From sequence record PP695294.1: a stretch of DNA of 64,000 nt; one strand, given 5' to 3'. Below the pieces are notes generated by a model. It saw only the letters and a program-made list of their open reading frames with translations, did no database searches and was not told where the DNA came from. A program made the translations under genes and the position numbers. Shown here in pieces: positions 7,499-52,565 of the stretch (position 1 is the first letter of the stretch; each line of letters starts with the position of its first letter).

Positions 7499-8260
7499 AT
7501 GAAAATGAAAACTATCAATCTGCTTACTCTGGCTAATGGCTCTATCGAACGTAGCGAAGACGACGGTGCTATCCTGCAAGCAACCAACGGCTTTAAAATT
7601 AGACTGTCCCCAATTCAATTCACCGGCTTACAAGTCTGGCTGCGCGAAATCAACAAACGCAAACTGCCGCGCCGTATGGCGGTTGGCGACCTGCTCTTTA
7701 CACTGGATAACGTTGACGGTGTTAAACCGGAACTGTACGAAGTTCAGTACAAAGCCGCAGTCGATACACTGCGCCTGAAGAAAGGGGAAGAAATCAAATT
7801 CATTCCGGTGACCTATAATGGTAACAATTACCTGCAGATGGAAGACACTCCGTTCGCTGCGCACGTCACTGACACTGCTGTTGAATTGGTCATTGCCTTT
7901 GGTCTGGTTGCGACTCCGGCGGTACTGGAAATCAGCGAAGACCCACTGCAAGATTTCGGTACGCTGTTCGATACCATGCTGGGTGGCATGAAGCTCGGGA
8001 ATATCACCAAGGTCATCCGCCGTATTCCGATTCTGAATGCGCAGCCGAAAGTGATGACCCTGGCAGAAAGCATGATGGAACACCCGGAGCTGACTGCTGA
8101 AGAAATTCAGGCGCAAGAAGACGCAATTGAAGAAGAACGTCAGAACGCCCAGCGTGAAGCCATGAAGCCGTTCCGTGGTTTCCTGGATGCTATCTTCGAC
8201 TGTGCTAACTCGCTGATGAAACCAGTTGAAGTGAAAACCGCTGAAGAACCAGCAGCGTAA
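7499..8260 (+). CDS. Hypothetical early protein
   Basis: 253 aa, SD TAAGGA, strong codon bias. Confidence 0.8.
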   Translation: MKMKTINLLTLANGSIERSEDDGAILQATNGFKIRLSPIQFTGLQVWLREINKRKLPRRMAVGDLLFTLDNVDGVKPELYEVQYKAAVDTLRLKKGEEIKFIPVTYNGNNYLQMEDTPFAAHVTDTAVELVIAFGLVATPAVLEISEDPLQDFGTLFDTMLGGMKLGNITKVIRRIPILNAQPKVMTLAESMMEHPELTAEEIQAQEDAIEEERQNAQREAMKPFRGFLDAIFDCANSLMKPVEVKTAEEPAA

Positions 8261-8318
8261 ATATTACGTTAGCCTGAAACCGTATGTAATCGACCATTAA
8301 TCTTAAGGAGCATTTATA

Positions 8319-8864
8319 ATGAAACGTGTCAATCTTAAAGATGTTATTAGCGTAAGTAACGATAAATCATCGCCCCTTTGGGATGAGGTTACTACGCTGC
8401 AATTTAGTACCAGTGCCATGACAATCCCACGTCCAGTTATGATTGGTCTGGGCGTATTCATTTTAGAATGCGACCGTCGTTCAACAGGCACGCACATTCT
8501 AACGTACGGTGGGTACGAGTTTGTCGTCGAAAGCGAACTTAACAAACATTGCTCAGAGGGCATCATCGGTCTTTGGAAATACTTAATCGATGCGGGATTG
8601 TCCGACATGTCTAAAGTCTGTAGTCACGATTACGGTAAGTTGGAGCATTTTGTTCGTCGTAACGGTGAGCGTGTTCCGGTGACGATTGATGGTTACCAGA
8701 CCAAAATGGTCACCGCGCCTTACAGCGCTGAGGGGATACGTGCAACGCTTTACATTCGCCAGACGCTCGTACGTGATGACCTGTTAGACGAAGCAGAGCA
8801 AACTCTACATGGTCGTGTTGTGAACCTCGCACCGTCTTACGACGCGCAGCGTATGGTTCAATGA
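8319..8864 (+). CDS. Hypothetical protein
   Basis: 181 aa, SD TAAGGAG. Confidence 0.75.
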   Translation: MKRVNLKDVISVSNDKSSPLWDEVTTLQFSTSAMTIPRPVMIGLGVFILECDRRSTGTHILTYGGYEFVVESELNKHCSEGIIGLWKYLIDAGLSDMSKVCSHDYGKLEHFVRRNGERVPVTIDGYQTKMVTAPYSAEGIRATLYIRQTLVRDDLLDEAEQTLHGRVVNLAPSYDAQRMVQ

Positions 8865-40221: not shown

Positions 40222-41355
40222 ATGTCGACGCTCGATTTAGATTTAGAAGTCCTGACTGACGACTACGATCGCCTGGTCGCACTCGAAGGTCTGGGAGTTA
40301 AGCCCGACTTCCCTGCGGTTTGCGCGATTCGTCAGCGTTGGTGCTTAACCGACGACGGTGAAGATATGTTGGTTGCTCGTGAATCGCGTGAAGCGATGGA
40401 GCGTGCTCAGTTTATGACTGATACCGACCCGCGGGCTGGCATCCATCGCGCAGCAGGGCGCATTACTGCGAAAGCTGTTAAAGGCGCTGGAAAGCTAGTG
40501 GGTGCTGGACTAGGTGCAACCGCAAAGGGCGCGGGTAAACTTTCGAAAAAGCTCGCATTACGCTTTTACGATTTCGCGGAAGCGCTAGCGAAAGAACAAG
40601 CCGACCGTTTGAAAGAAATAACTTCGAAAGCTGCTTTCATGGAACGTAAGCTCAATAAGCTTAAAACGCGAATGTCGCTGCTAGATGACCACAAAACACT
40701 CGCTGCAGTTGACGTTCACACGAGTAGCTGGACGTCTAAAATTTGCTTTGAAGATCGACCCGATTTTGAAGCGTGTGTTAAGTTTTCTAAACAAACAAAC
40801 GCGTACGAAGGCGTCGTGCAAAAGTACACGGTTTACACACGCACCGCTCTGAAGAAAAGCAAAGCATTCGAAGGGCCAGGCTTAAAACAAATCAGCAAGT
40901 CCACGAACTGGGCAGTTAAGCGTGCTGCTGGGTTGCTTGGCATCATCGATCCCTTTAAAAAGGTGGAAGCTTTTCCTGTCCCTGGAAATATCGTTGTGGT
41001 TGAGCACCATAGTGGTAAGGTCAGTTGGGCAATTGCGCGTGACGGTGAGTATGGTGAAACCATTAAATCGCTGGATATGCATCAGTGTGGGAAAGCAATA
41101 GAGGCTGTGGAAGCACTTATCAAATCTATTGCTGCACGTGGAACAAAGAACCGTGTTGTGGGCTACACCGGCATTTACGAAGAAGTGGAAGCGATGAAGT
41201 CCGAGCTTAAGAACCTAGAAGGGGATGAGCTGAAGGAGGCCACGTTACGTTACCGTAATGCAATGGCGATGGAAGACGCATTCACCACGGCGTTGGTACG
41301 CGTGGCGGAGGGTCTAATGGAGTGGACGAAGCAATCGCTGGCCGAGGTGAACTGA
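40222..41355 (+). CDS. Head protein, distant paralog of 4747/6102
   Basis: IRQRW...VARES propeptide motifs; AFPVPGN resembles VLALPGN. Confidence 0.65.
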   Translation: MSTLDLDLEVLTDDYDRLVALEGLGVKPDFPAVCAIRQRWCLTDDGEDMLVARESREAMERAQFMTDTDPRAGIHRAAGRITAKAVKGAGKLVGAGLGATAKGAGKLSKKLALRFYDFAEALAKEQADRLKEITSKAAFMERKLNKLKTRMSLLDDHKTLAAVDVHTSSWTSKICFEDRPDFEACVKFSKQTNAYEGVVQKYTVYTRTALKKSKAFEGPGLKQISKSTNWAVKRAAGLLGIIDPFKKVEAFPVPGNIVVVEHHSGKVSWAIARDGEYGETIKSLDMHQCGKAIEAVEALIKSIAARGTKNRVVGYTGIYEEVEAMKSELKNLEGDELKEATLRYRNAMAMEDAFTTALVRVAEGLMEWTKQSLAEVN

Positions 41356-41816
41356 TGAAGATTATTACCATAGTGGGGCCAGACACGGCTAACGGCAGGA
41401 AATATTCCACAGATATCCTCGCGCTTTATAACGAGCTGGACAAAAGCGAAATAGAAAGCTATCGAAAAGAGACGGGTATTAATGTCCGTTTTACGCCGGC
41501 TAAATCGTTAGCCGAGCGCTTCCGGGGTCGTTTACTGGCGGTCGTGGACGACGGTGTCTTGTATGGCTTTGCGCAATACCGCACGATGACTGAAGAGGGT
41601 GTGACGATGATGTCGGTATCCTCACTGGTCGTTAGCAGCAGCGCACGTGGTAAAGGTTACGGCACCGCGTTGATGGATGCGGTAAAGAAATCCGCAACGG
41701 AAAAAGGGTGTACAGTTGTTCACCTGTCCGTGAACGCCGGTAACGCTGCCGCGAAGTCGCTCTACGACAAAGCTGGCTTTAAGGTAGGTGCTTACCAGAT
41801 GTATTGGAGGGTGTGA
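41355..41816 (+). CDS. GNAT family acetyltransferase (tandem copy 1)
   Basis: VSSSARGKGYGTALM; NAAAKSLYDKAGF; start moved to ATG 41355. Confidence 0.92.
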   Translation: MKIITIVGPDTANGRKYSTDILALYNELDKSEIESYRKETGINVRFTPAKSLAERFRGRLLAVVDDGVLYGFAQYRTMTEEGVTMMSVSSLVVSSSARGKGYGTALMDAVKKSATEKGCTVVHLSVNAGNAAAKSLYDKAGFKVGAYQMYWRV

Positions 41817-43973: not shown

Positions 43974-44720
43974 ATGACTGTTAATACTACGAAGAAAAAG
44001 TTCCTGTCCGTCCCCACTGCCTGTGGCGAATATCGTTATGTGTTTTTGTATAACGAAGAGATGATCGGCAAGGGCGGGATGCCGATTATGATAGAGCATA
44101 AGCTCATCAGCGCTAAAACAGGCGGTACCGTTGTACATGGCACGACTGAGTTCTTCGCAACTAACGCAACGCGGGAAACTGTTATTCGCGGGCTGCTGAA
44201 AGCACTGCGTGAAGTCTCAGCCAGGATGTTCTTTAAACACATCGCTCGTAAGCCTGAACTCATACCCGCGTGGAAAGAGTTCGACTTAGAAGCACTGCGT
44301 GAAGCTGCACCACGCTATGTCTTCATTGAAGAATGCATCAATGCGTATTTTAAAGACGTGATGCAAACCGAGCGATTGGTAAATAAAGCATCCGAAACAG
44401 GAAATCGTTTCTTCCGCAGTGTCAAATTTAAAGAAGACCTCCGGGCTAACTTCAACGATATTGAACTGCGTGTCACCCGCCGCATGACACTGCTGCGTCC
44501 CGAATCGGATACGCCGCAGGCCATGTTGTCTTATTCCTTGGCCCCTTCTGCGTTGTTTAACAAACGCGAAGGCTTCAGTGTAATGTCGCTCAATTTCACT
44601 AACAAATACGCGTTAGGGGAATGGCCGTCATTAAATGCATTCTTCAAAAGTCCGGGCATCAAGCCGGTCATCGAAGCATGGATTGAGCACACCTGGACAC
44701 CAGAAATGAAGAACCACTAG
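43974..44720 (+). CDS. Hypothetical early protein
   Basis: 248 aa single-gene cassette. Confidence 0.75.
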   Translation: MTVNTTKKKFLSVPTACGEYRYVFLYNEEMIGKGGMPIMIEHKLISAKTGGTVVHGTTEFFATNATRETVIRGLLKALREVSARMFFKHIARKPELIPAWKEFDLEALREAAPRYVFIEECINAYFKDVMQTERLVNKASETGNRFFRSVKFKEDLRANFNDIELRVTRRMTLLRPESDTPQAMLSYSLAPSALFNKREGFSVMSLNFTNKYALGEWPSLNAFFKSPGIKPVIEAWIEHTWTPEMKNH

Positions 44721-44745: not shown

Positions 44746-44786
44746 CAGGCATCCTTCGGGGTGCCTGTTTTATTTTTTTTTCTTTA
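44746..44786 (+). terminator. Intrinsic terminator
   Basis: CAGGCATCC-TTCG-GGGTGCCTG plus T tract. Confidence 0.88.
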
Positions 44787-45475: not shown

Positions 45476-45512
45476 CCCTCTTACCTTCGGGTAAGAGGGC
45501 ATTGTCTTTTTT
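45476..45512 (+). terminator. Intrinsic terminator, same stem as 17872
   Basis: CCCTCTTACC-TTCG-GGTAAGAGGG. Confidence 0.85.
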
Positions 45513-46034: not shown

Positions 46035-46421
46035 ATGAACTGGTATGTGAGCGGTATCACCCGTCGTGTAATGACGGAAGAGGATGATCGATGTAAACAT
46101 CTTAAAGTGGGGTCTATAGCTCCACGTTATACGGCAGAGTGCGACCCATGGGGCCGCGAAACGTATTACATGTGCGAGAACTGCTGGGAAAAACTGCAGG
46201 CTGAAATTGCAGCTGAAGAAGTGGTCTGCGACGATTGCAAAGGTACCTTCCCGAAACGGGATACTGTTGAGTGGAAATGGCACGACTTTGACCCCAGTCA
46301 AGGGGATAAAGAACTTTGTATCTGTAATAACTGCGTGTCTTTACCGACACATTTAAACCGTGTAGAGAATGACCGTCGGGCATTTGAACACGACTTTCCA
46401 GAAGCAGCTTTCTGGGATTAA
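46035..46421 (+). CDS. Cys-rich, probable zinc-finger protein
   Basis: CENC, CDDC, CNNC motifs. Confidence 0.7.
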   Translation: MNWYVSGITRRVMTEEDDRCKHLKVGSIAPRYTAECDPWGRETYYMCENCWEKLQAEIAAEEVVCDDCKGTFPKRDTVEWKWHDFDPSQGDKELCICNNCVSLPTHLNRVENDRRAFEHDFPEAAFWD

Positions 46422-46447: not shown

Positions 46448-47104
46448 ATGGCGAAGGCCCCTAAAACTGTAGCAAAAGATTCAATGGCAAGCAGCGCGGT
46501 TAAATCCACAAAAACGCGCACCACTGAATCCACGCGTACATCTAGCATTCCGAAGCCGGATGTGATTGTACCGATCAGTGAGCGTCTGAAAACGATTCAC
46601 ATCGAACGTGAATTTCCGATTGACCTTGGTCAGGAAATCGTTTCGGTTAACCTTGGTAGCGACGTACGCTTTACCATCTATAAAGGCGCGCATCTGAACA
46701 ACATGGTGCTAACCCGCGGTGATGAAGTTATCGGCCTGTCTCGTTACGACACGCAAATCGAAAACATCTATCCGGTGTTTGCAGTAGCGATGTTGCGTTT
46801 GTTCATGCAGGATAAAGCCGACCTTTGTGGCCAGCTTGCGGGTATGGCCGATCGTGTTGGCCACATTCTGCCGACGCTGGTGAAACTTTACCCGGTTACG
46901 ATTGATGTGGCGTTCACTACGGTAGACAACAACCACGGCTATATCGTGCTGACCAAAGACGGTAAAGTTATCGCTGGCAATCTGACTGATAACGAAGTGC
47001 AGAAACATATGGACAAATTTGCGTTCATGGTGAATCGCCTAGCACACGTCAGTGTCAAACATTCCGAAACTTGGACGACGCTTGTCTCCAAACCGGAACT
47101 GTAA
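46448..47104 (+). CDS. Hypothetical protein with K/S/T-rich N-terminal tail
   Basis: 218 aa, SD TAAGGAG, strong codon bias. Confidence 0.8.
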   Translation: MAKAPKTVAKDSMASSAVKSTKTRTTESTRTSSIPKPDVIVPISERLKTIHIEREFPIDLGQEIVSVNLGSDVRFTIYKGAHLNNMVLTRGDEVIGLSRYDTQIENIYPVFAVAMLRLFMQDKADLCGQLAGMADRVGHILPTLVKLYPVTIDVAFTTVDNNHGYIVLTKDGKVIAGNLTDNEVQKHMDKFAFMVNRLAHVSVKHSETWTTLVSKPEL

Positions 47105-47107
47105 TCA

Positions 47108-47145
47108 TTAAGGGGTCTTCGGACCCCTTAATTTTTTGTCTTTTT
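47108..47145 (+). terminator. Intrinsic terminator
   Basis: TTAAGGGGTC-TTCG-GACCCCTTAA plus T tract. Confidence 0.9.
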
Positions 47146-47193
47146 ACGCATTATCCTCATGATGTGACAGCAATACCTTTTGAGGGCATTACA

Positions 47194-48195
47194 ATGAAAA
47201 CTGTGGCTAAATTGTTTCGCACCAGCATCCGCACTGCCGAGTTCCGAAATAACGTCGGTAGCGATACTGTACGAGCACGCCGCCTAAAAGAGTTTCTAAA
47301 GGACGAGACTTATTCTGTTTACGTGGTGAAGAATAAAGAAACCTGGGAGGGTTATTTAGTGGCCACCTATCGACACGGTGACCCTACGCTAACCTGTCAC
47401 TATTTTGAGGAGTTTGTACCTGGGGCATTCGATAAAGTTGGTTTGGCTCTTGTGCTCGACCATACCGGATTCGAATATATGTCGTGCCCAGCACCTACTG
47501 ACGATGTTGAACAAAAACTGGTCGAAAAAGGGTTTGTTCTTTCAGATATCGTTTGGGCATGTCATTCTAAACTGTTTGACAAAGTAATCACCGCATCAGA
47601 AATCAAGATTATTTCTGGTGATGCATACGCAGAACTTACCAAGGAAGATAAAGACGTTATCCTGAATTTGATTAGCGGTGCAATTTGCGAAGAGCTAGAA
47701 TACGATATGCGTGGCTACTATACACACATTGGTCCGTTAGCAGAAACAGTAATAGCAAGAATTCAGCACGCTAATGTGGAGACTGCAATTTGGCGAGACG
47801 GTCATGATATCGTCGGTATTGCCCAGATGCGCTTGGTTACACCAGGCGTCGTTGAACTTTCTGGTTTAACCGTTGCGCCCACGCACCGTAAACGTGGCAT
47901 TGGCCGCCGGCTAATGGGCGCGCTATTCGATTTCGCACAACGTCATTCCGACCAAGTCTATATTGAAACAGCTGCTGATAATAATCCAGCAAATCACCTG
48001 TACGGTAACATCTTACGTTGCAAGCAGGTACTGCGTACACTAACGTTGAAACGCGATCCTGAACTTATTAGCTGGAAACGGGTGAATGGGAACCGCGCCG
48101 ATCGAGTGCTGAAAGAAGAACCTAGCATTCCGGTGGAGACTACAACCAGGCTGACTATCAGTGATATGTTTCAATCTGGCATGAGAGGATGTTAA
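47194..48195 (+). CDS. Tandem-GNAT acetyltransferase (degenerate N domain, intact C domain)
   Basis: LTVAPTHRKRGIGRRLM and NNPANHLY in C domain; LVEKGFVL in N domain; ATG 47194 with SD GAGG. Confidence 0.85.
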   Translation: MKTVAKLFRTSIRTAEFRNNVGSDTVRARRLKEFLKDETYSVYVVKNKETWEGYLVATYRHGDPTLTCHYFEEFVPGAFDKVGLALVLDHTGFEYMSCPAPTDDVEQKLVEKGFVLSDIVWACHSKLFDKVITASEIKIISGDAYAELTKEDKDVILNLISGAICEELEYDMRGYYTHIGPLAETVIARIQHANVETAIWRDGHDIVGIAQMRLVTPGVVELSGLTVAPTHRKRGIGRRLMGALFDFAQRHSDQVYIETAADNNPANHLYGNILRCKQVLRTLTLKRDPELISWKRVNGNRADRVLKEEPSIPVETTTRLTISDMFQSGMRGC

Positions 48196-48198
48196 CGG

Positions 48199-49017
48199 GT
48201 GATAAAACCAATTTTAAAATGGATGGGTGGTAAGAGTCGTGTACTGCCCGAGCTGCTACAGGTGTTTCCGGATGCTGAGTATTTCGTTGAACCTTTTGTG
48301 GGCGCAGGGTCAGTGTTTTTAAACACTAAATACCCGAACTATATTCTCGGCGACACGAACCCGGACTTAATCGAGTTACTGACCATGGCGCGCGATCGTC
48401 CGGAAGCGCTGATTCTGGAAGCAAAGGCGCTCTTTGCAAATGGGACGGACCGCGGTCTCTACATGGAACGACGCGAGGGATTTAACAGCGAAACAACCAC
48501 GGGGAAACCTAATCTCCAGCGCGCCGCGATGTTCCTGTATCTTACACGTCATGGTTACAATGGTTTGTGCAGATACAATCAGTCGGGTGGGTTTAACGTG
48601 CCCTATGGTCAACACCCGAACGGTGTCTATTTCCCTGAAGAGGAAATTCTGGCGTGGGCAAAACGTTGTTCGGAAACCAACGTCGAGCTGCTCTGCGCGG
48701 ACTTCCGCGACATCCTAAATAAGTGCCCATCTAACGCTGTGATATACGCCGACCCGCCCTACATCCCACTTTCGGATACGGCTAAACACGCGCAGTATCA
48801 CAGCAAAGAATTTTCACAAGCTGACCACCGCGAGTTAGCGAAACTTTTAAAACAACAAGCTGCCGATGGCAATAAGGTCGTTCTGTCAAACGCAGATACG
48901 TTACTCACACGTGACATCTACTACGGTTTTACCTGGCGTGAAGTTCAGGTGGGCCGATATATGTCCGCCGATGCGAATAAACGTAAAGCGGTGACAGAGC
49001 TAATCGGCACCTTATAA
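48199..49017 (+). CDS. dam: DNA adenine methyltransferase (Dam family)
   Basis: LKWMGGKSR, VEPFVGAGSVF, YADPPY. Confidence 0.95.
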   Translation: MIKPILKWMGGKSRVLPELLQVFPDAEYFVEPFVGAGSVFLNTKYPNYILGDTNPDLIELLTMARDRPEALILEAKALFANGTDRGLYMERREGFNSETTTGKPNLQRAAMFLYLTRHGYNGLCRYNQSGGFNVPYGQHPNGVYFPEEEILAWAKRCSETNVELLCADFRDILNKCPSNAVIYADPPYIPLSDTAKHAQYHSKEFSQADHRELAKLLKQQAADGNKVVLSNADTLLTRDIYYGFTWREVQVGRYMSADANKRKAVTELIGTL

Positions 49018-49026
49018 GGTACCAAC

Positions 49027-49830
49027 ATGCAACTATTTAATCTATACGGTATGGACAAAAATGACCTGACCGTAGAGTTTAGTGGTCGATTGACCACCTT
49101 GGGGCAACTCCGTGAACGGATTCAAGATTTGCGACCCGTCGCAGACCAAGAAGACGATCATTGGTTAGTGTTGAGCAATAGCGGTCGTGCGCAAATGTAT
49201 TTTCGTGGATGTCGTTCAGGTATTGTTTACTACATCTACGAGTTGCACGTGCTTTCCGAGCCCCTGTTCCACGAGTGGAAGCGTTTAACGCGACTCCTGG
49301 AAGTGCAGATGCTTGATATCACCTGTTTTCCGCATGACACCGAACATGCGGCATTGTACCAATGTCTGGGGTTCGAAGCTGTAACGAAGCGTGTGGAGAT
49401 TACTGTCAGTCCGAAATACGGTTTTACGTCAGACCCATCGGTTGTCCCGTTGGAGACATTGTCATTAGAACAAACCCAAGATGTTTGCTATCTAATGCGA
49501 CCTACGCTAAAAGACGCAGGAACGCGTGAGATGTTGGGTGAATTAGCAAATGGTTTTGTCTCTGCGTTCGTGGGGCTGCACGGCCAGAAACCGTTTTCAT
49601 TAATGCTTTATAAGGAGTTCCCGAAGAGCATCATTACTGAGCAATTCTGCTGCCAAACTTTTGACCCGGTTGCTTACTCGGTAGAGTTTCTAAAACACTA
49701 CCACGCCATTTTGCATTTGGCGGGACAGAAAGGTAAGAAGGTCAACATGGGCGTTGCGATAGAGCACGAGTTTCCTTCTATCGAAGGGTTAGAGTATCGT
49801 GTAATCACGCATCACTACACCCTTGCGTAA
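49027..49830 (+). CDS. Degenerate tandem GNAT-fold protein
   Basis: AALYQCLGFEAV resembles motif B at mid-protein; no clear motif A. Confidence 0.45.
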   Translation: MQLFNLYGMDKNDLTVEFSGRLTTLGQLRERIQDLRPVADQEDDHWLVLSNSGRAQMYFRGCRSGIVYYIYELHVLSEPLFHEWKRLTRLLEVQMLDITCFPHDTEHAALYQCLGFEAVTKRVEITVSPKYGFTSDPSVVPLETLSLEQTQDVCYLMRPTLKDAGTREMLGELANGFVSAFVGLHGQKPFSLMLYKEFPKSIITEQFCCQTFDPVAYSVEFLKHYHAILHLAGQKGKKVNMGVAIEHEFPSIEGLEYRVITHHYTLA

Positions 49831-49839
49831 GGAGAGAAT

Positions 49840-50652
49840 ATGCTGAGAGTTATCGAACGCACGGAGAGGATTCTGGACCGAACGTGGTTGGAAGACCGTA
49901 AAGCGTTATCGTTGTTAAATGATATCGATCCTTCCACGTTACAAGATGAACGTCGTCTTTACTACCGAATCTTTGAAGTTTTCAGTCGGGACACAGTTGC
50001 GCCCGACGCGATCGTGCTCTGTCTGGACCACGGATACATGTTAGAAGTTATCAATATGGTTCGTGCTTTAGACGCCCAGTTAACCTCGCTTGCGGATGCT
50101 TTACTCCGCTCAGCGGGGTGTAACTACGCGATGCATTTTACTCGTTCGGAAGGGGACGAATATTCGCGCATGGGCTTTTGTTGCGAAACGATAAACTACC
50201 GCAAAATTAATACATCGGTGCCTAGCCACGATGAGGATTTCTGTGGGGATGTCAGTTCGTTGTTCGATAGTAAGAAAGCGTTCTTGGATTGGGTTAGGAT
50301 GCTTTACGGTACAAGCTCTATCTACTCAACGCTTGTCATGGGCGGGAGGATGATGTCATGGCGGAGCAGCGATAGTTACAAACTGACAGTGCTCTCACAT
50401 CGTGGACGACGCTGGGTTATTGGTGGATGGTTTACCGCAGAAGGGGTGGTTACTCTAACTCGAGAGGAGTTCGGACTGTTGATGCACTGTATCCAGTCTG
50501 AATTACCGGTGGGGGATGAATTAGTTTACACTTACCACCAATATACTGGGGGACCAGCCGCAATGTGGTTATTAGAAAATGGTTGGCTACCCGAAAGTTA
50601 TGTGTACGGACGTGCCCTGAAAACTACTAATGGAGAAAATAATGCAAATTAA
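49840..50652 (+). CDS. Degenerate tandem GNAT-fold protein
   Basis: EYSRMGF mid-protein and AMWLLENGW near end, both motif-B-like; no clear motif A. Confidence 0.35.
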   Translation: MLRVIERTERILDRTWLEDRKALSLLNDIDPSTLQDERRLYYRIFEVFSRDTVAPDAIVLCLDHGYMLEVINMVRALDAQLTSLADALLRSAGCNYAMHFTRSEGDEYSRMGFCCETINYRKINTSVPSHDEDFCGDVSSLFDSKKAFLDWVRMLYGTSSIYSTLVMGGRMMSWRSSDSYKLTVLSHRGRRWVIGGWFTAEGVVTLTREEFGLLMHCIQSELPVGDELVYTYHQYTGGPAAMWLLENGWLPESYVYGRALKTTNGENNAN

Positions 50653-50920
50653 TCGTACAGTGTCGAAGTCTAAAGAAGTCGTTTACAACGTTGAGGACGG
50701 CGACGTAATGCAGTTCCGTGCCGTTATTGACGAACAGCACGTACTCCAAGTCGTTTATTCGAAAGAAGAAATGACTCGCGCACATAGCCGCGTGTTGGAA
50801 AAGCTCGTCGCGAAAGCCAAACAACGCGACGGCATTAAATCCTACAACGTTATGTACGGTTATCAGTTACGTGAGGTGGAAGGGGAGCTGTTAATCACCC
50901 CTGTTCCGGTAACGGCGTAA
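50642..50920 (+). CDS. Small hypothetical protein
   Basis: 92 aa from ATG 50642, SD GGAG. Confidence 0.75.
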   Translation: MQINRTVSKSKEVVYNVEDGDVMQFRAVIDEQHVLQVVYSKEEMTRAHSRVLEKLVAKAKQRDGIKSYNVMYGYQLREVEGELLITPVPVTA

Positions 50921-50960
50921 TTCGCCATTGTATGACCCTTAAACACCGTTGAGGTTAACT

Positions 50961-51443
50961 ATGGATATGATCGAATTAGGTCAGCTCCCTCAGCACGATT
51001 TCGATTTAGGCGTGCGTCATGAGGAAGGGGCCGACGCGAACACACTGATGGCCCGCTACTACGAGCTACTGACCGGTCAACCGTTGGACGATGAACACAT
51101 CAACCGTTTTGAAAAACTGTTGGCACAACTCATCACCTCTAACGCAGAACGCATTGGCATGTTGAACGAAATGAACTTTGCCGATGTAGAGCCGTCTGAC
51201 GCTCAGAAGATTCTTATCGATGGTCCTGTGCCAAGCGATGAGGTACAAGACCTTCTGGCAGGTATCCGTGCAGGCTTCGATGAAGCTGCTGAGAAATACG
51301 CGGAAGAGCTGGCAGATGTCGATTTGGCTGCGCCGGTTGACCCGAATCCATCTGCAGAGGAGACTGCAGCTGCGAAATTGAAACTCGCACGCTTTATCTG
51401 TGCTGCTGTCTTGACAGACGACCGTGAAGAAAACCAACTGTAA
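50961..51443 (+). CDS. Acidic protein, probable late/head protein
   Basis: TATGAC at 50931, SD GAGG, AEE/AAE sites, own terminator at 51450. Confidence 0.6.
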   Translation: MDMIELGQLPQHDFDLGVRHEEGADANTLMARYYELLTGQPLDDEHINRFEKLLAQLITSNAERIGMLNEMNFADVEPSDAQKILIDGPVPSDEVQDLLAGIRAGFDEAAEKYAEELADVDLAAPVDPNPSAEETAAAKLKLARFICAAVLTDDREENQL

Positions 51444-51539
51444 GGCCCGCCTCCTTGCCCACGGGTGAGGAGGTCCCTTTTTATTTACATCAGTCCACTA
51501 ACTTATGTGAAACAACCCACGTAATGAGGAATTAAGAGA

Positions 51540-52522: not shown

Positions 52523-52565
52523 CCCCTACCTAACTTCGGTTAGGTAGGGTTCTTTTTATTTTTAA
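52523..52565 (+). terminator. Intrinsic terminator
   Basis: CCCTACCTAAC-TTCG-GTTAGGTAGGG plus T tract. Confidence 0.92.

What the first reader, a model, noticed from the sequence alone, without database searches (positions are those of the whole stretch)
47194..50920. Dam methylase embedded among tandem-GNAT proteins: candidate DNA-modification or acylation system
Seen: one tight unit (gaps 3, 9, 9 bp, then overlap) of tandem-GNAT (intact RKRGIG motif), Dam, two ~270-aa proteins with motif-B-like signatures at matching mid-protein positions (LVEKGF / LYQCLGF / YSRMGF) but no motif A, and a 92-aa protein. Established: Mu Mom is a GNAT-fold adenine-modifying enzyme giving restriction resistance, and degenerate GNAT domains often act as substrate-binding partners. 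Inference: a heteromeric complex of one catalytic and two pseudo-GNAT subunits working with Dam, either hypermodifying adenine or acylating a protein/RNA target. I know of no description of this arrangement.
Basis: partly seen in the sequence, partly recalled or inferred. Interest (0 to 1): 0.8.

Follow-up and report, generated by a model that had tools for sequence, protein, structure and literature searches.

The report
Phage Dam gene among GNAT-fold paralogues
In a Salmonella jumbo phage, an ordinary GATC-type DNA adenine methylase gene sits in one operon with three fast-evolving proteins that all look like double acetyltransferase (GNAT) folds, but nothing shows that they act with the methylase to build a new DNA modification.

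Summary
The window is Salmonella phage 1252, an SPN3US-like nucleus-forming jumbo phage. Genes at 47194-50920 (SPN3US gp104-gp108) are packed with gaps of 3, 9 and 9 bp and then an overlap. With gp109 they lie between two strong hairpin terminators (47107-47132, 51449-51474).

- **gp105** is a Dam-subfamily methylase. It keeps the cofactor and catalytic motifs and nearly all E. coli Dam GATC-contact residues.
- **gp104** has a recognisable GNAT domain only in its C-terminal half.
- **gp106 and gp107** have no sequence-level family. Moderate-confidence AlphaFold models of both match tandem-GNAT structures over their full length. The gp106 model also matches independent models of gp104 and gp107 orthologues. 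So the three are probably old paralogues, and two have lost the CoA-binding motif.

The proposed mechanism is not supported. The only CoA-motif GNAT (gp104) is missing from Erskinevirus phages, which keep Dam, gp106 and gp107. gp107 is missing or replaced in other lineages. gp106 and gp107 are acidic and show no Mom-like signal. Linkage is seen only in collinear relatives.

Most likely the Dam methylates phage GATC sites, which are strongly depleted across the clade, while the GNAT-fold array does a separate job aimed at the host. The parts are new members of known kinds; interest is moderate to low.

The parts
47107..47132 (+). Upstream hairpin terminator (11-bp stem, TTCG loop, T-run). It marks the 5' boundary of the unit.
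   Evidence: sequence
47143..47169 (+). Possible promoter-like element, TTTAC-N15-ATGTGACA. It is shared with sites at 44783 and 51484, each also just after a hairpin. This is inferred only, from three sites.
   Evidence: the pattern was derived from these same three sites, so the count is circular
47194..48195 (+). gp104 homologue, 333 aa. The C-terminal half is a GNAT acyl-CoA N-acyltransferase domain carrying RKRGIG (nt 47887-47904). The N-terminal half has no sequence family and is probably a degenerate GNAT domain.
   Evidence: Pfam Acetyltransf_1 2.3e-14 at residues 194-270; phrog_8663; PDB and NCBIfam hits cover the C-half only; orthologue alignment; BFVD models of its orthologues match the gp106 model over full length
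48199..49017 (+). gp105 homologue, 272 aa. It is an orphan Dam-family N6-adenine DNA methyltransferase, with FxGxG at nt 48295-48312, DPPY at 48751-48762 and the YNGLCRYN...NVP DNA-contact block at 48556-48609.
   Evidence: PF02086 1.7e-53; TIGR00571 256.7 bits against a cutoff of 114.85; E. coli Dam 2g1p 3.9e-57 with alignment; PADLOC best hit is an orphan MTase; motif positions
49027..49830 (+). gp106 homologue, 267 aa. Predicted tandem GNAT fold without the CoA pyrophosphate-binding motif. Together with gp108 and gp109, it is one of the non-Dam genes present in every relative's cluster.
   Evidence: phrog_9941; AF2 model with pLDDT 61 (C-domain 70-90); Foldseek PDB E 2.5e-6 to tandem-GNAT proteins; BFVD; family of 11 clusters
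49840..50652 (+). gp107 homologue, 270 aa. Predicted tandem GNAT fold without the CoA motif. Present in Seoulvirus, Erskinevirus and Machinavirus only.
   Evidence: phrog_13677; AF2 pLDDT 65; Foldseek PDB E 6e-5 to tandem-GNAT proteins; distribution
50642..50920 (+). gp108 homologue, 92 aa, function unknown. It is conserved in all relatives (42-95% identity) and overlaps the end of gp107 by 11 bp.
   Evidence: phrog_7896; weak resemblance to the C-terminal part of Dam
50961..51443 (+). gp109 homologue, 160 aa, very acidic (pI 4.1). It is the last gene before the downstream terminator and is conserved in all relatives.
   Evidence: phrog_8221
51449..51474 (+). Downstream hairpin terminator (11-bp stem, T-run). 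It marks the 3' boundary of the unit.

Best explanation
This is a six-gene transcription unit (gp104-gp109) bounded by hairpins. It was inherited vertically within the SPN3US-like branch of nucleus-forming jumbo phages.

One gene, gp105, is an orphan Dam that puts N6-methyl groups on adenine in GATC in the phage's own DNA. This step is inferred from family membership and conserved contact residues.

Three other genes (gp104, gp106, gp107) are anciently duplicated, fast-diverging tandem-GNAT-fold proteins.
- gp104 keeps an acyl-CoA site in its C-terminal domain and is probably an active N-acyltransferase acting on a protein or small-molecule target.
- gp106 and gp107 have lost the CoA-binding motif. 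They are either pseudoenzymes that bind something or enzymes that use another acyl donor.

I infer that the GNAT-fold array is a diversifying, host-directed or anti-defence gene family. I also infer that it shares an operon with dam because of common timing and ancestry, not because the proteins form one DNA-modifying machine.
For: Unit boundaries.

Dam identity and GATC-type contacts:
- establish family membership.
- Residues equivalent to EcoDam K9, Y119, N120, L122, R124 and P134 are kept; only Y138 is changed, to His. The roles of these residues come from PMC4417163.
- No nuclease partner is present, and the best PADLOC model is an orphan MTase.

GATC depletion:
- GATC is the most depleted 4-bp palindrome in the window (125 observed against 301.5 expected, z = -14).
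- It is also depleted in every relative's locus (O/E 0.15-0.50), while CATG and GTAC are near 1.
- GATC status therefore matters to this clade.

Tandem-GNAT fold of gp106 and gp107.

Paralogy:
- Same-position domain pairs give the best hhalign scores (P 0.0008-0.08, except gp106-C against gp107-C at 0.35). Cross-position pairs give P >= 0.19, except gp104-N against gp104-C at 0.05.
- The motif-B-like GF sits at residues 108-116 in all three proteins.

Fast divergence (Seoulvirus against Machinavirus): GNAT-fold genes are 26-31% identical, Dam is 53-54%, and gp108/gp109 are 53-60%.

Modular gain and loss:
- gp104 is absent from Erskinevirus.
- gp107 is absent or replaced by a third ~250-aa family elsewhere, and ChrisDB has all three.
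Against: - Dam and gp106 are adjacent in every genome that has either of this clade's versions. In some genomes their stop and start codons overlap (ChrisDB 4180/4183; L016 7001). This would also fit a functional pair.
- The AF2 models are only moderate (pLDDT 61 and 65; N-terminal domains mostly below 50) and were built from 5-8 sequences.
- No sequence-level link to GNAT exists for gp106 or gp107.
- No target, donor or expression timing is known.
- gp106 keeps a few near-invariant polar residues (R122, E205, H263), so it may be catalytic after all.
Confidence: 0.5

Rival explanations
1. gp104 (catalytic), gp106 and gp107 (pseudo-GNAT subunits) form a complex that works with Dam to hypermodify adenine in phage DNA, analogous to Mom, or to acylate a common target.
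For: Tight spacing in one hairpin-bounded unit. GNAT folds on both sides of dam. The cluster is kept in five lineages. Mom is a GNAT-superfamily adenine modifier, as stated in the review PMC7824862.
Against: - The supposed catalytic subunit, gp104, is missing from whole Erskinevirus genomes that keep the rest.
- gp107 is missing from L016-L019 and replaced in Kwan and L015.
- There is no hit to any Mom or DNA-modification family in Pfam, PHROGs, NCBIfam or PADLOC.
- gp106 and gp107 are acidic.
- The GNAT-fold genes evolve much faster than Dam.
- All linked cases are collinear relatives.
Confidence: 0.07
2. gp106 alone is an accessory partner of Dam, for example tuning its activity or specificity or helping it reach the DNA inside the phage nucleus. 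gp104 and gp107 would be dispensable paralogues with other roles.
For: Dam, gp106, gp108 and gp109 are the only members present in all lineages. gp106 always directly follows dam, sometimes with overlapping stop and start codons.
Against: Adjacency is expected anyway in collinear genomes. gp106 diverges far faster than Dam (21-30% against 53-68%), which is unusual for an obligate partner. No known Dam needs a partner (own knowledge). Overlapping starts are common in phage genomes.
Confidence: 0.12
3. gp106 and/or gp107 are active transferases that use a donor other than acyl-CoA, such as aminoacyl-tRNA or acyl-ACP, as in the FemX, MprF, L/F-transferase or Sbb17-type tandem GNAT enzymes. They would act on a host envelope, protein or metabolite target.
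For: The best PDB match of the gp106 model is an aminoacyl-tRNA-dependent peptide synthase (9wqw, 2.5e-6). FemX and aminoacyl-phosphatidylglycerol synthase domains are also among the hits. These enzyme classes also lack the CoA motif (own knowledge). gp106 has near-invariant R122, E205 and H263.
Against: Foldseek hits to CoA-dependent tandem GNATs (MshD, Eis, CBG, 3n7z) are equally good, and TM-scores are low at 0.3-0.44. There is no sequence similarity to FemAB or DUF2156 families. The ranking of hits from a moderate model cannot identify the donor.
Confidence: 0.08
4. The GNAT-fold assignment of gp106 and gp107 is an artefact of low-confidence models. They would be unrelated clade-specific proteins of unknown fold, and only gp104 and Dam have recognisable functions.
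For: Mean pLDDT is 61 and 65, with large stretches below 50. TM-scores to PDB hits are 0.2-0.44. Whole-protein profile-profile comparisons are not significant. Profile searches of the PDB find nothing.
Against: - Both models independently retrieve almost only tandem-GNAT entries out of 350,542 chains.
- The well-predicted C-domain of gp106 (pLDDT 70-90) has the GNAT strand-helix order.
- Independent BFVD models of gp104 and gp107 orthologues match the gp106 model.
- Domain-wise hhalign shows a consistent same-position signal.
- The GF motif is at the same position in all three proteins.
Confidence: 0.13

Closest known systems
E. coli Dam and orphan phage Dam methylases (D12 class; T4, P1/P7 and temperate enterobacterial phage Dams)
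   Same: gp105 aligns end to end with EcoDam (3.9e-57). It has FxGxG, DPPY and the Y119/N120/L122/R124/P134 contact residues and passes the TIGR00571 cutoff. It has no nuclease partner.
   Different: It scores below the EcoDam equivalog cutoff (242 against 441). The residue equivalent to Y138 is His. It is encoded by a nucleus-forming jumbo phage whose genome is strongly GATC-depleted. Its closest non-clade relatives are only about 44% identical.
Tandem-GNAT proteins with one active and one degenerate domain (mycothiol synthase MshD, clavulanate-pathway ORF14/CBG, Eis, the Legionella protein VipF)
   Same: Size is about 270-330 aa, with two GNAT-like halves. gp104 has the CoA motif only in its C-terminal half, as reported for MshD (own knowledge). 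These proteins are the top structural matches for the gp106 and gp107 models.
   Different: gp106 and gp107 lack the CoA motif in both halves. There is no sequence-level similarity, and TM-scores are only 0.3-0.44. The substrates are unknown.
Aminoacyl-tRNA-dependent tandem-GNAT transferases (FemX, MprF synthase domain, Sbb17/Sba18)
   Same: Tandem GNAT fold without the acyl-CoA P-loop-like motif. They are among the best structural hits for gp106.
   Different: There are no Pfam FemAB or DUF2156 hits and no evidence for tRNA use. Hits to CoA-dependent enzymes are equally good.
Phage Mu Mom (GNAT-superfamily adenine N6 acyl-modifying enzyme)
   Same: GNAT superfamily, phage-encoded, and linked in the literature to Dam through regulation of mom expression (own knowledge; PMC7824862 for the Mom family in jumbo phages).
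   Different: Mom is a single-domain protein. None of gp104, gp106 or gp107 hits a Mom family or a PHROG annotated as such. In Mu, Dam is a host regulator, not a subunit.
Phage GNATs that modify host proteins (e.g. Rac of phiKMV-like phages; the RimI-like GNATs of jumbo phages discussed in PMC7824862)
   Same: A phage-encoded acetyltransferase that is not a virion part as far as the SPN3US papers read here report. The best NCBIfam hit of gp104 is RimI (1.5e-8, below cutoff).
   Different: It is a two-domain protein belonging to a three-member (in some phages four-member) paralogue array. No target is known.

Membership tests
Dam family (D12 class N6-adenine DNA methyltransferase, TIGR00571) | Profile score above the curated cutoff over the full length | tested here: met
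   TIGR00571 256.7 bits (cutoff 114.85), residues 2-269; PF02086 182.4 bits (cutoff 22)
Dam family (D12 class N6-adenine DNA methyltransferase, TIGR00571) | AdoMet-binding FxGxG and catalytic DPPY motifs | tested here: met
   FVGAGS at aa 33-38 and DPPY at aa 185-188
Dam family (D12 class N6-adenine DNA methyltransferase, TIGR00571) | GATC-contact residues of EcoDam (K9, Y119, N120, L122, R124, P134, Y138) | tested here: met
   Six of the seven are identical in the alignment to 2g1p. The Y138 equivalent is His (residue roles from PMC4417163).
Dam family (D12 class N6-adenine DNA methyltransferase, TIGR00571) | m6A actually made at GATC in DNA | not testable with these tools
   Needs DpnI/MboI digests or SMRT/nanopore reads of virion DNA
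E. coli Dam equivalog (NF008152) | Score above the equivalog cutoff | tested here: not met
   242.4 bits against a cutoff of 441. It is a Dam-subfamily member, not the host orthologue.
Type II restriction-modification system | A cognate restriction endonuclease gene next to the methylase | tested here: not met
   No nuclease family in any neighbour. The best PADLOC model is 'orphan methyltransferase' (1.3e-84).
GNAT superfamily (gp104) | Profile match and Q/R-x-x-G-x-G/A acyl-CoA motif | tested here: met
   PF00583 54.1 bits (cutoff 20.7) at residues 194-270; RKRGIG at aa 232-237. In Machinavirus and Wellingtonvirus orthologues the first Gly is Arg but the second Gly is invariant.
GNAT superfamily (gp104) | A second, N-terminal GNAT domain ('tandem') | tested here: inconclusive
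   No profile hit for residues 1-165. Indirect support only: BFVD models of orthologues align over full length with the tandem-GNAT-like gp106 model, and hhalign of N-domains gives P 0.015-0.03.
GNAT superfamily (gp106, gp107) | GNAT fold (beta1-alpha1-alpha2-beta2-4-alpha3-beta5-alpha4-beta6) | tested here: met
   AF2 models of moderate confidence. Foldseek PDB top hits are almost all tandem GNATs (E 2.5e-6 and 6e-5). The secondary-structure order fits.
GNAT superfamily (gp106, gp107) | Sequence-profile membership | tested here: not met
   No Pfam or NCBIfam hit at E <= 1 or 0.1. Profile search of the PDB gives only noise.
GNAT superfamily (gp106, gp107) | Acyl-CoA pyrophosphate-binding motif at the beta4-alpha3 junction | tested here: not met
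   No Q/R-x-x-G-x-G/A at the predicted junctions in either half, and none conserved in the family alignments.
Mom-type DNA adenine acyl-modification | Similarity to the Mom family | tested here: not met
   The only hits are each protein's own clade-specific PHROG and generic acetyltransferase PHROGs. There is no Mom-annotated family in Pfam, PHROGs, NCBIfam or PADLOC.
Mom-type DNA adenine acyl-modification | Modified adenine other than m6A in phage DNA | not testable with these tools
   Needs nucleoside LC-MS
FemABX / aminoacyl-tRNA-dependent tandem-GNAT transferases | Family profile match, or structural match specific to this class | tested here: inconclusive
   Structural hits to Sbb17, FemX and A-PGS (E 2.5e-6 to 1e-3) are interleaved with equally good CoA-dependent tandem GNATs. 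No Pfam hit.

The most novel reading that the evidence does not exclude
Dam, gp106, gp108 and gp109 are the four genes kept in every lineage. They might form a dedicated module of nucleus-forming SPN3US-like phages in which a CoA-independent tandem-GNAT protein acts with the methylase. It could convert or extend adenine methylation into a bulkier mark, or gate where and when GATC sites are methylated inside the phage nucleus. gp104, gp107 and the third family would be exchangeable specificity paralogues.
Probability: 0.08. Interest if true: 0.75.

Novelty: new member of a known kind. Interest (0 to 1): 0.33.

Why it matters
If the ordinary reading is right, the gain is annotation. Two 'hypothetical' gene families of SPN3US-like phages (phrog_9941, phrog_13677) can be labelled as CoA-motif-less tandem-GNAT-fold paralogues of gp104. 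The operon can be described as an orphan Dam plus a diversifying GNAT-fold array.

Two points deserve a simple experiment. First, these nucleus-forming phages both carry a Dam and avoid GATC two- to six-fold, which raises the question of which host activity reads GATC status on their DNA. Second, a phage paralogue family that keeps the GNAT fold while losing the CoA site is a candidate set of pseudoenzymes or of transferases using other donors. Such proteins could act in host takeover or counter-defence. Only if Dam and gp106 prove to act together would this become a new DNA-modification system.

Tried and rejected
- **Pairwise BLAST** among the five proteins and their neighbours gave nothing above chance.
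- **Whole-protein hhalign** between family alignments was not significant. A first run with a wrong flag forced global alignments and was discarded.
- **Profile searches of the PDB** with the gp106 and gp107 alignments gave only noise: PDE4D and condensin at E about 0.1.
- **A word-index search of 5.8 billion proteins** for gp104, gp106 and gp107 found only close phage relatives.
- **A full HMMER scan of 1.84 billion representatives** with the gp106 profile found 11 clusters, all of the same size and, where checked, all from jumbo phages. No cellular relatives appeared.
- **An IMG/VR scan** with the gp107 alignment found only the already known genomes.
- **The gp107 HMM** does not detect the proteins in the same position in Kwan or L015. 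Those belong to a third family, shared with ChrisDB gp124.
- **Literature.** SPN3US virion and essential-gene papers do not mention gp104-gp108. Searches for jumbo-phage Dam/GATC and for Chimalliviridae methyltransferases gave nothing on this clade.
- **The promoter-like pattern** TTTAC-N15-ATGTGACA matches only the three sites it was derived from, so it is not evidence.
- **The gp108 resemblance to the Dam C-terminus** (hhalign P 0.0012, probability 19%) was judged unproven.
- **Recent horizontal transfer of the block** was considered and rejected. GC content is the same as in the rest of the window, and the gene order is shared across genera.

Full report
**What the window is.** The region 47000-51000 is 100% identical to Salmonella phage 1252 (PP695294.1, same coordinates). 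It is 96.7% identical to Salmonella phage SPN3US, a 240-kb Seoulvirus. The genes of the finding correspond to SPN3US gp104 to gp108 (locus tags SPN3US_0104-0108). The family assignment to nucleus-forming jumbo phages (Chimalliviridae) rests on my own knowledge of SPN3US and on the papers listed.

**Checking the observation.** The ORFs and spacings are as reported:
- 47194-48195 (333 aa);
- a 3-bp gap, then 48199-49017 (272 aa, GTG start);
- a 9-bp gap, then 49027-49830 (267 aa);
- a 9-bp gap, then 49840-50652 (270 aa);
- 50642-50920 (92 aa), overlapping the previous gene by 11 bp.

RKRGIG lies at residues 232-237 of the first protein. The three 'motif-B-like' strings lie at residues 109-114, 110-116 and 108-113 of the three larger proteins, so they do sit at matching positions.

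Pfam sees a GNAT domain only in residues 194-270 of the 333-aa protein and a D12 methylase in the second protein (1.7e-53). It sees nothing in the other three. PHROGs puts each unknown protein in a small family of unknown function.

The unit is longer than reported. Strong terminator-like hairpins with 11-bp stems stand at 47107-47132 and 51449-51474, with none between them. The unit therefore also holds gp109 (50961-51443).

**The methylase.**
- gp105 aligns over its whole length with E. coli Dam (2g1p, 3.9e-57) and passes the curated cutoff of the Dam subfamily model (256.7 against 114.85 bits). It does not pass the cutoff of the E. coli equivalog.
- It has FxGxG and DPPY.
- Residues equivalent to EcoDam K9, Y119, N120, L122, R124 and P134 are identical; Y138 is His. 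PMC4417163 describes these residues as the GATC contacts, with R124 being the main discriminator.
- No neighbour resembles a nuclease, and the best PADLOC model is an orphan methyltransferase.

I conclude, by inference from the sequence, that it makes m6A at GATC. Outside this phage clade the nearest relatives are Dams of temperate Klebsiella and Salmonella phages at about 38-44% identity.

**The two unknown ~270-aa proteins.**
- Word-index searches of 5.8 billion proteins found only close phage relatives.
- AlphaFold2 models built on those shallow alignments were of moderate quality. gp106 had pLDDT 61, with the C-terminal half at 70-90 and the N-terminal half mostly below 50. gp107 had pLDDT 65.
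- Foldseek against 350,542 PDB chains returned almost only two-domain GNAT proteins, aligned over 240-300 columns. For gp106 these were an aminoacyl-tRNA-dependent peptide synthase, 3frm, 3n7z, VipF, the clavulanate-pathway tandem GNAT, FemX, MshD and Eis, with 48 hits at E <= 0.001 and a best E of 2.5e-6.
- For gp107 the hits were VipF, Eis-like proteins and the clavulanate-pathway protein, best E 6e-5. TM-scores were low (0.2-0.44), as expected when domain packing is uncertain.
- Against BFVD, whose models were made independently, the gp106 model matched its own orthologues. It then matched the gp104 orthologue of phage Kwan over full length (1.3e-8) and other gp104-type acetyltransferases. 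It also matched the gp107 orthologue of phiEaH2 (4.9e-5).
- Whole-protein profile comparison between the three families was not significant.
- Domain by domain, the same-position pairs scored best:
  - gp104-N/gp106-N 0.015
  - gp104-N/gp107-N 0.028
  - gp106-N/gp107-N 0.013
  - gp104-C/gp106-C 0.0008
  - gp104-C/gp107-C 0.084

  Cross-position pairs were 0.19 or worse, apart from gp104-N against gp104-C at 0.05. gp106-C against gp107-C was 0.35.
- Neither protein has a Q/R-x-x-G-x-G/A motif at the predicted beta4-alpha3 junctions, and none is conserved in the wider alignments.

Together this makes it probable, at about 0.75-0.8, that gp104, gp106 and gp107 are old paralogues with a tandem-GNAT architecture and that only gp104 keeps an acyl-CoA site.

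**Distribution and synteny.** The full HMMER scan of 1.84 billion representatives with the gp106 profile found 11 clusters, all 257-285 aa apart from fragments. The loci I could fetch are all jumbo phages of 220-250 kb with the same local gene order, running from thymidylate kinase and an HTH gene through this cluster to gp109 and gp110.

| Lineage | Content of the cluster |
|---|---|
| Seoulvirus (SPN3US, SPAsTU, pEa_SNUABM_29) | all five genes |
| Machinavirus (ChrisDB, Caitlin) | all five genes plus a third ~250-aa gene |
| Wellingtonvirus (Kwan) and UViG L015 | gp104, Dam, gp106, the third family in place of gp107, gp108 |
| Erskinevirus (Asesino, phiEaH2) | no gp103 or gp104; a tblastn of all phage records finds no gp104 relative anywhere in these genomes |
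| UViGs L016-L019 | no gp107 and no third family |

Dam, gp106, gp108 and gp109 are present everywhere. Between Seoulvirus and Machinavirus, Dam is 53-54% identical and gp108/gp109 are 53-60%. gp104, gp106 and gp107 are only 26-31% identical.

**What this means for the proposed mechanism.**
- An obligate complex of one catalytic and two pseudo-GNAT subunits is hard to keep when the only CoA-motif subunit is dispensable in one genus and one 'pseudo' subunit is dispensable or replaced in others.
- No search connected any of the proteins with Mom or another DNA-modification family.
- gp106 and gp107 are acidic, with pI 5.8 and 5.3. This does not exclude DNA work but does not suggest it.
The test has little power here, since every genome with these genes is a collinear relative and the families occur nowhere else.
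- What remains open is a narrower idea: that gp106, which always directly follows dam and sometimes overlaps it by start and stop codons, is a partner of Dam.

**Best explanation.** The unit is an operon inherited within this clade. It combines an orphan GATC Dam with a diversifying array of tandem-GNAT-fold paralogues. Dam most likely methylates phage DNA. This matters to these phages, because GATC is the most depleted 4-bp palindrome in the window (125 against 301.5 expected, z = -14). It is depleted in every 8-kb block and in every relative's locus (O/E 0.15-0.50), while CATG and GTAC are near 1.

gp104 is probably an active N-acyltransferase with an unknown, probably protein or small-molecule, target. 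Its best family hits (RimI, MshD, streptothricin acetyltransferase) are all below cutoffs. gp106 and gp107 are either pseudoenzymes or transferases that use another donor. Their fast divergence and gain/loss pattern fit genes at the phage-host interface. These functional statements are inferences; none was tested.

**Comparison with known systems and novelty.** The Dam is a normal member of the Dam subfamily. gp104 is a normal, if two-domain, GNAT. gp106 and gp107 are very divergent members of the GNAT fold class, closest in architecture to tandem GNATs such as MshD, the clavulanate-pathway protein and VipF. In lacking the CoA motif they resemble the aminoacyl-tRNA-dependent class. I found no paper that describes gp104-gp108 or this arrangement. 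I rate the finding as new members of known kinds. The 'system' reading has a small residual chance (about 0.08).

**Limits.** No multimer prediction was available. The hhalign P-values come from small alignments and are not calibrated. The expression class and localisation of these proteins are unknown.

Noticed in passing
whole window 1-64000; also loci L004-L009, L015-L017, L020: GATC is the most depleted 4-bp palindrome: 125 observed against 301.5 expected (O/E 0.41, z -14), and 0.24-0.57 in every 8-kb block. It is also depleted (O/E 0.15-0.50) in the homologous loci of all relatives, all of which carry the Dam. CATG and GTAC are near 1.
   Followed up: partly
window 7437, 15942, 22752, 23557, 31783, 43862, 45562, 52164, 62522 (+ strand) and 62377 (- strand): The AT-rich motif GATAKATATTAY occurs 10 times (up to 1 mismatch) against 0.59 expected, nine of them on the + strand. 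Where checked (43862, 45562, 52164) it lies just upstream of a gene (gp99, gp101, gp112), so it is probably a phage promoter class. None precedes the gp104-gp109 unit.
   Followed up: partly
window 50642-50920 (gp108) versus 48796-48951 (Dam residues ~200-251): The 92-aa protein weakly resembles the C-terminal helix-strand part of the Dam (31% over 52 aa; hhalign P 0.0012, probability 19%). It could be a remnant of a duplicated dam fragment or it could be chance.
   Followed up: partly
window 50961-51443 (gp109): The last gene of the unit encodes a very acidic 160-aa protein (pI 4.1, 35 Asp+Glu) that is conserved in all relatives. Its charge is reminiscent of DNA-mimic proteins, but no family hit was found.
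   Followed up: no
window 46448-47104 (gp103); Kwan gp127 in L020:809-1456: Proteins of about 215 aa from Kwan and Huxley, upstream of the GNAT gene, give weak structural matches to the gp106 model (E 7e-4 to 4e-3). gp103 itself, in the window, has no detectable relation to them. gp103 is lost together with gp104 in Erskinevirus.
   Followed up: partly
L005:5792-6550 (ChrisDB gp124), L020:6672-7409 (Kwan gp134), L015:~7834-8571: A third family of ~245-255-aa proteins occupies the slot after gp106 or gp107 in Machinavirus, Wellingtonvirus and one uncultured phage. It is not detectably related to gp107 by HMM, and its fold was not tested.
   Followed up: partly
window 43974-44720 (gp99): This 248-aa protein belongs to another clade-specific paralogue family that has three adjacent copies in phage Kwan (gp128-gp130) and one in L015.
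   Followed up: no
window 41322-41816: A separate single-domain GNAT (164 aa) lies next to head-protein genes. The gp104-family HMM detects it at 1.2e-8.
   Followed up: no
window 46035-46421 (gp102): A Cys-rich 128-aa protein with several CxxC pairs and a weak SprT-like hit (1e-3, far below cutoff).
   Followed up: no
GenBank records LR535901, LR535903-LR535908, LR535911-LR535913, LR535917 (SPFM phages): These records match the region only as 3-40 broken pieces covering about 60% of it, and their annotated proteins are scrambled. This looks like frameshift-ridden assemblies rather than biology.
   Followed up: no
window 44746-44767, 45476-45499, 47107-47132, 51449-51474, 52524-52549: Regular, strong hairpins with 9-11-bp stems, 4-nt loops (TTCG in four, ACGG at 51449) and T-runs punctuate the + strand. 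They split this region into short units.
   Followed up: partly
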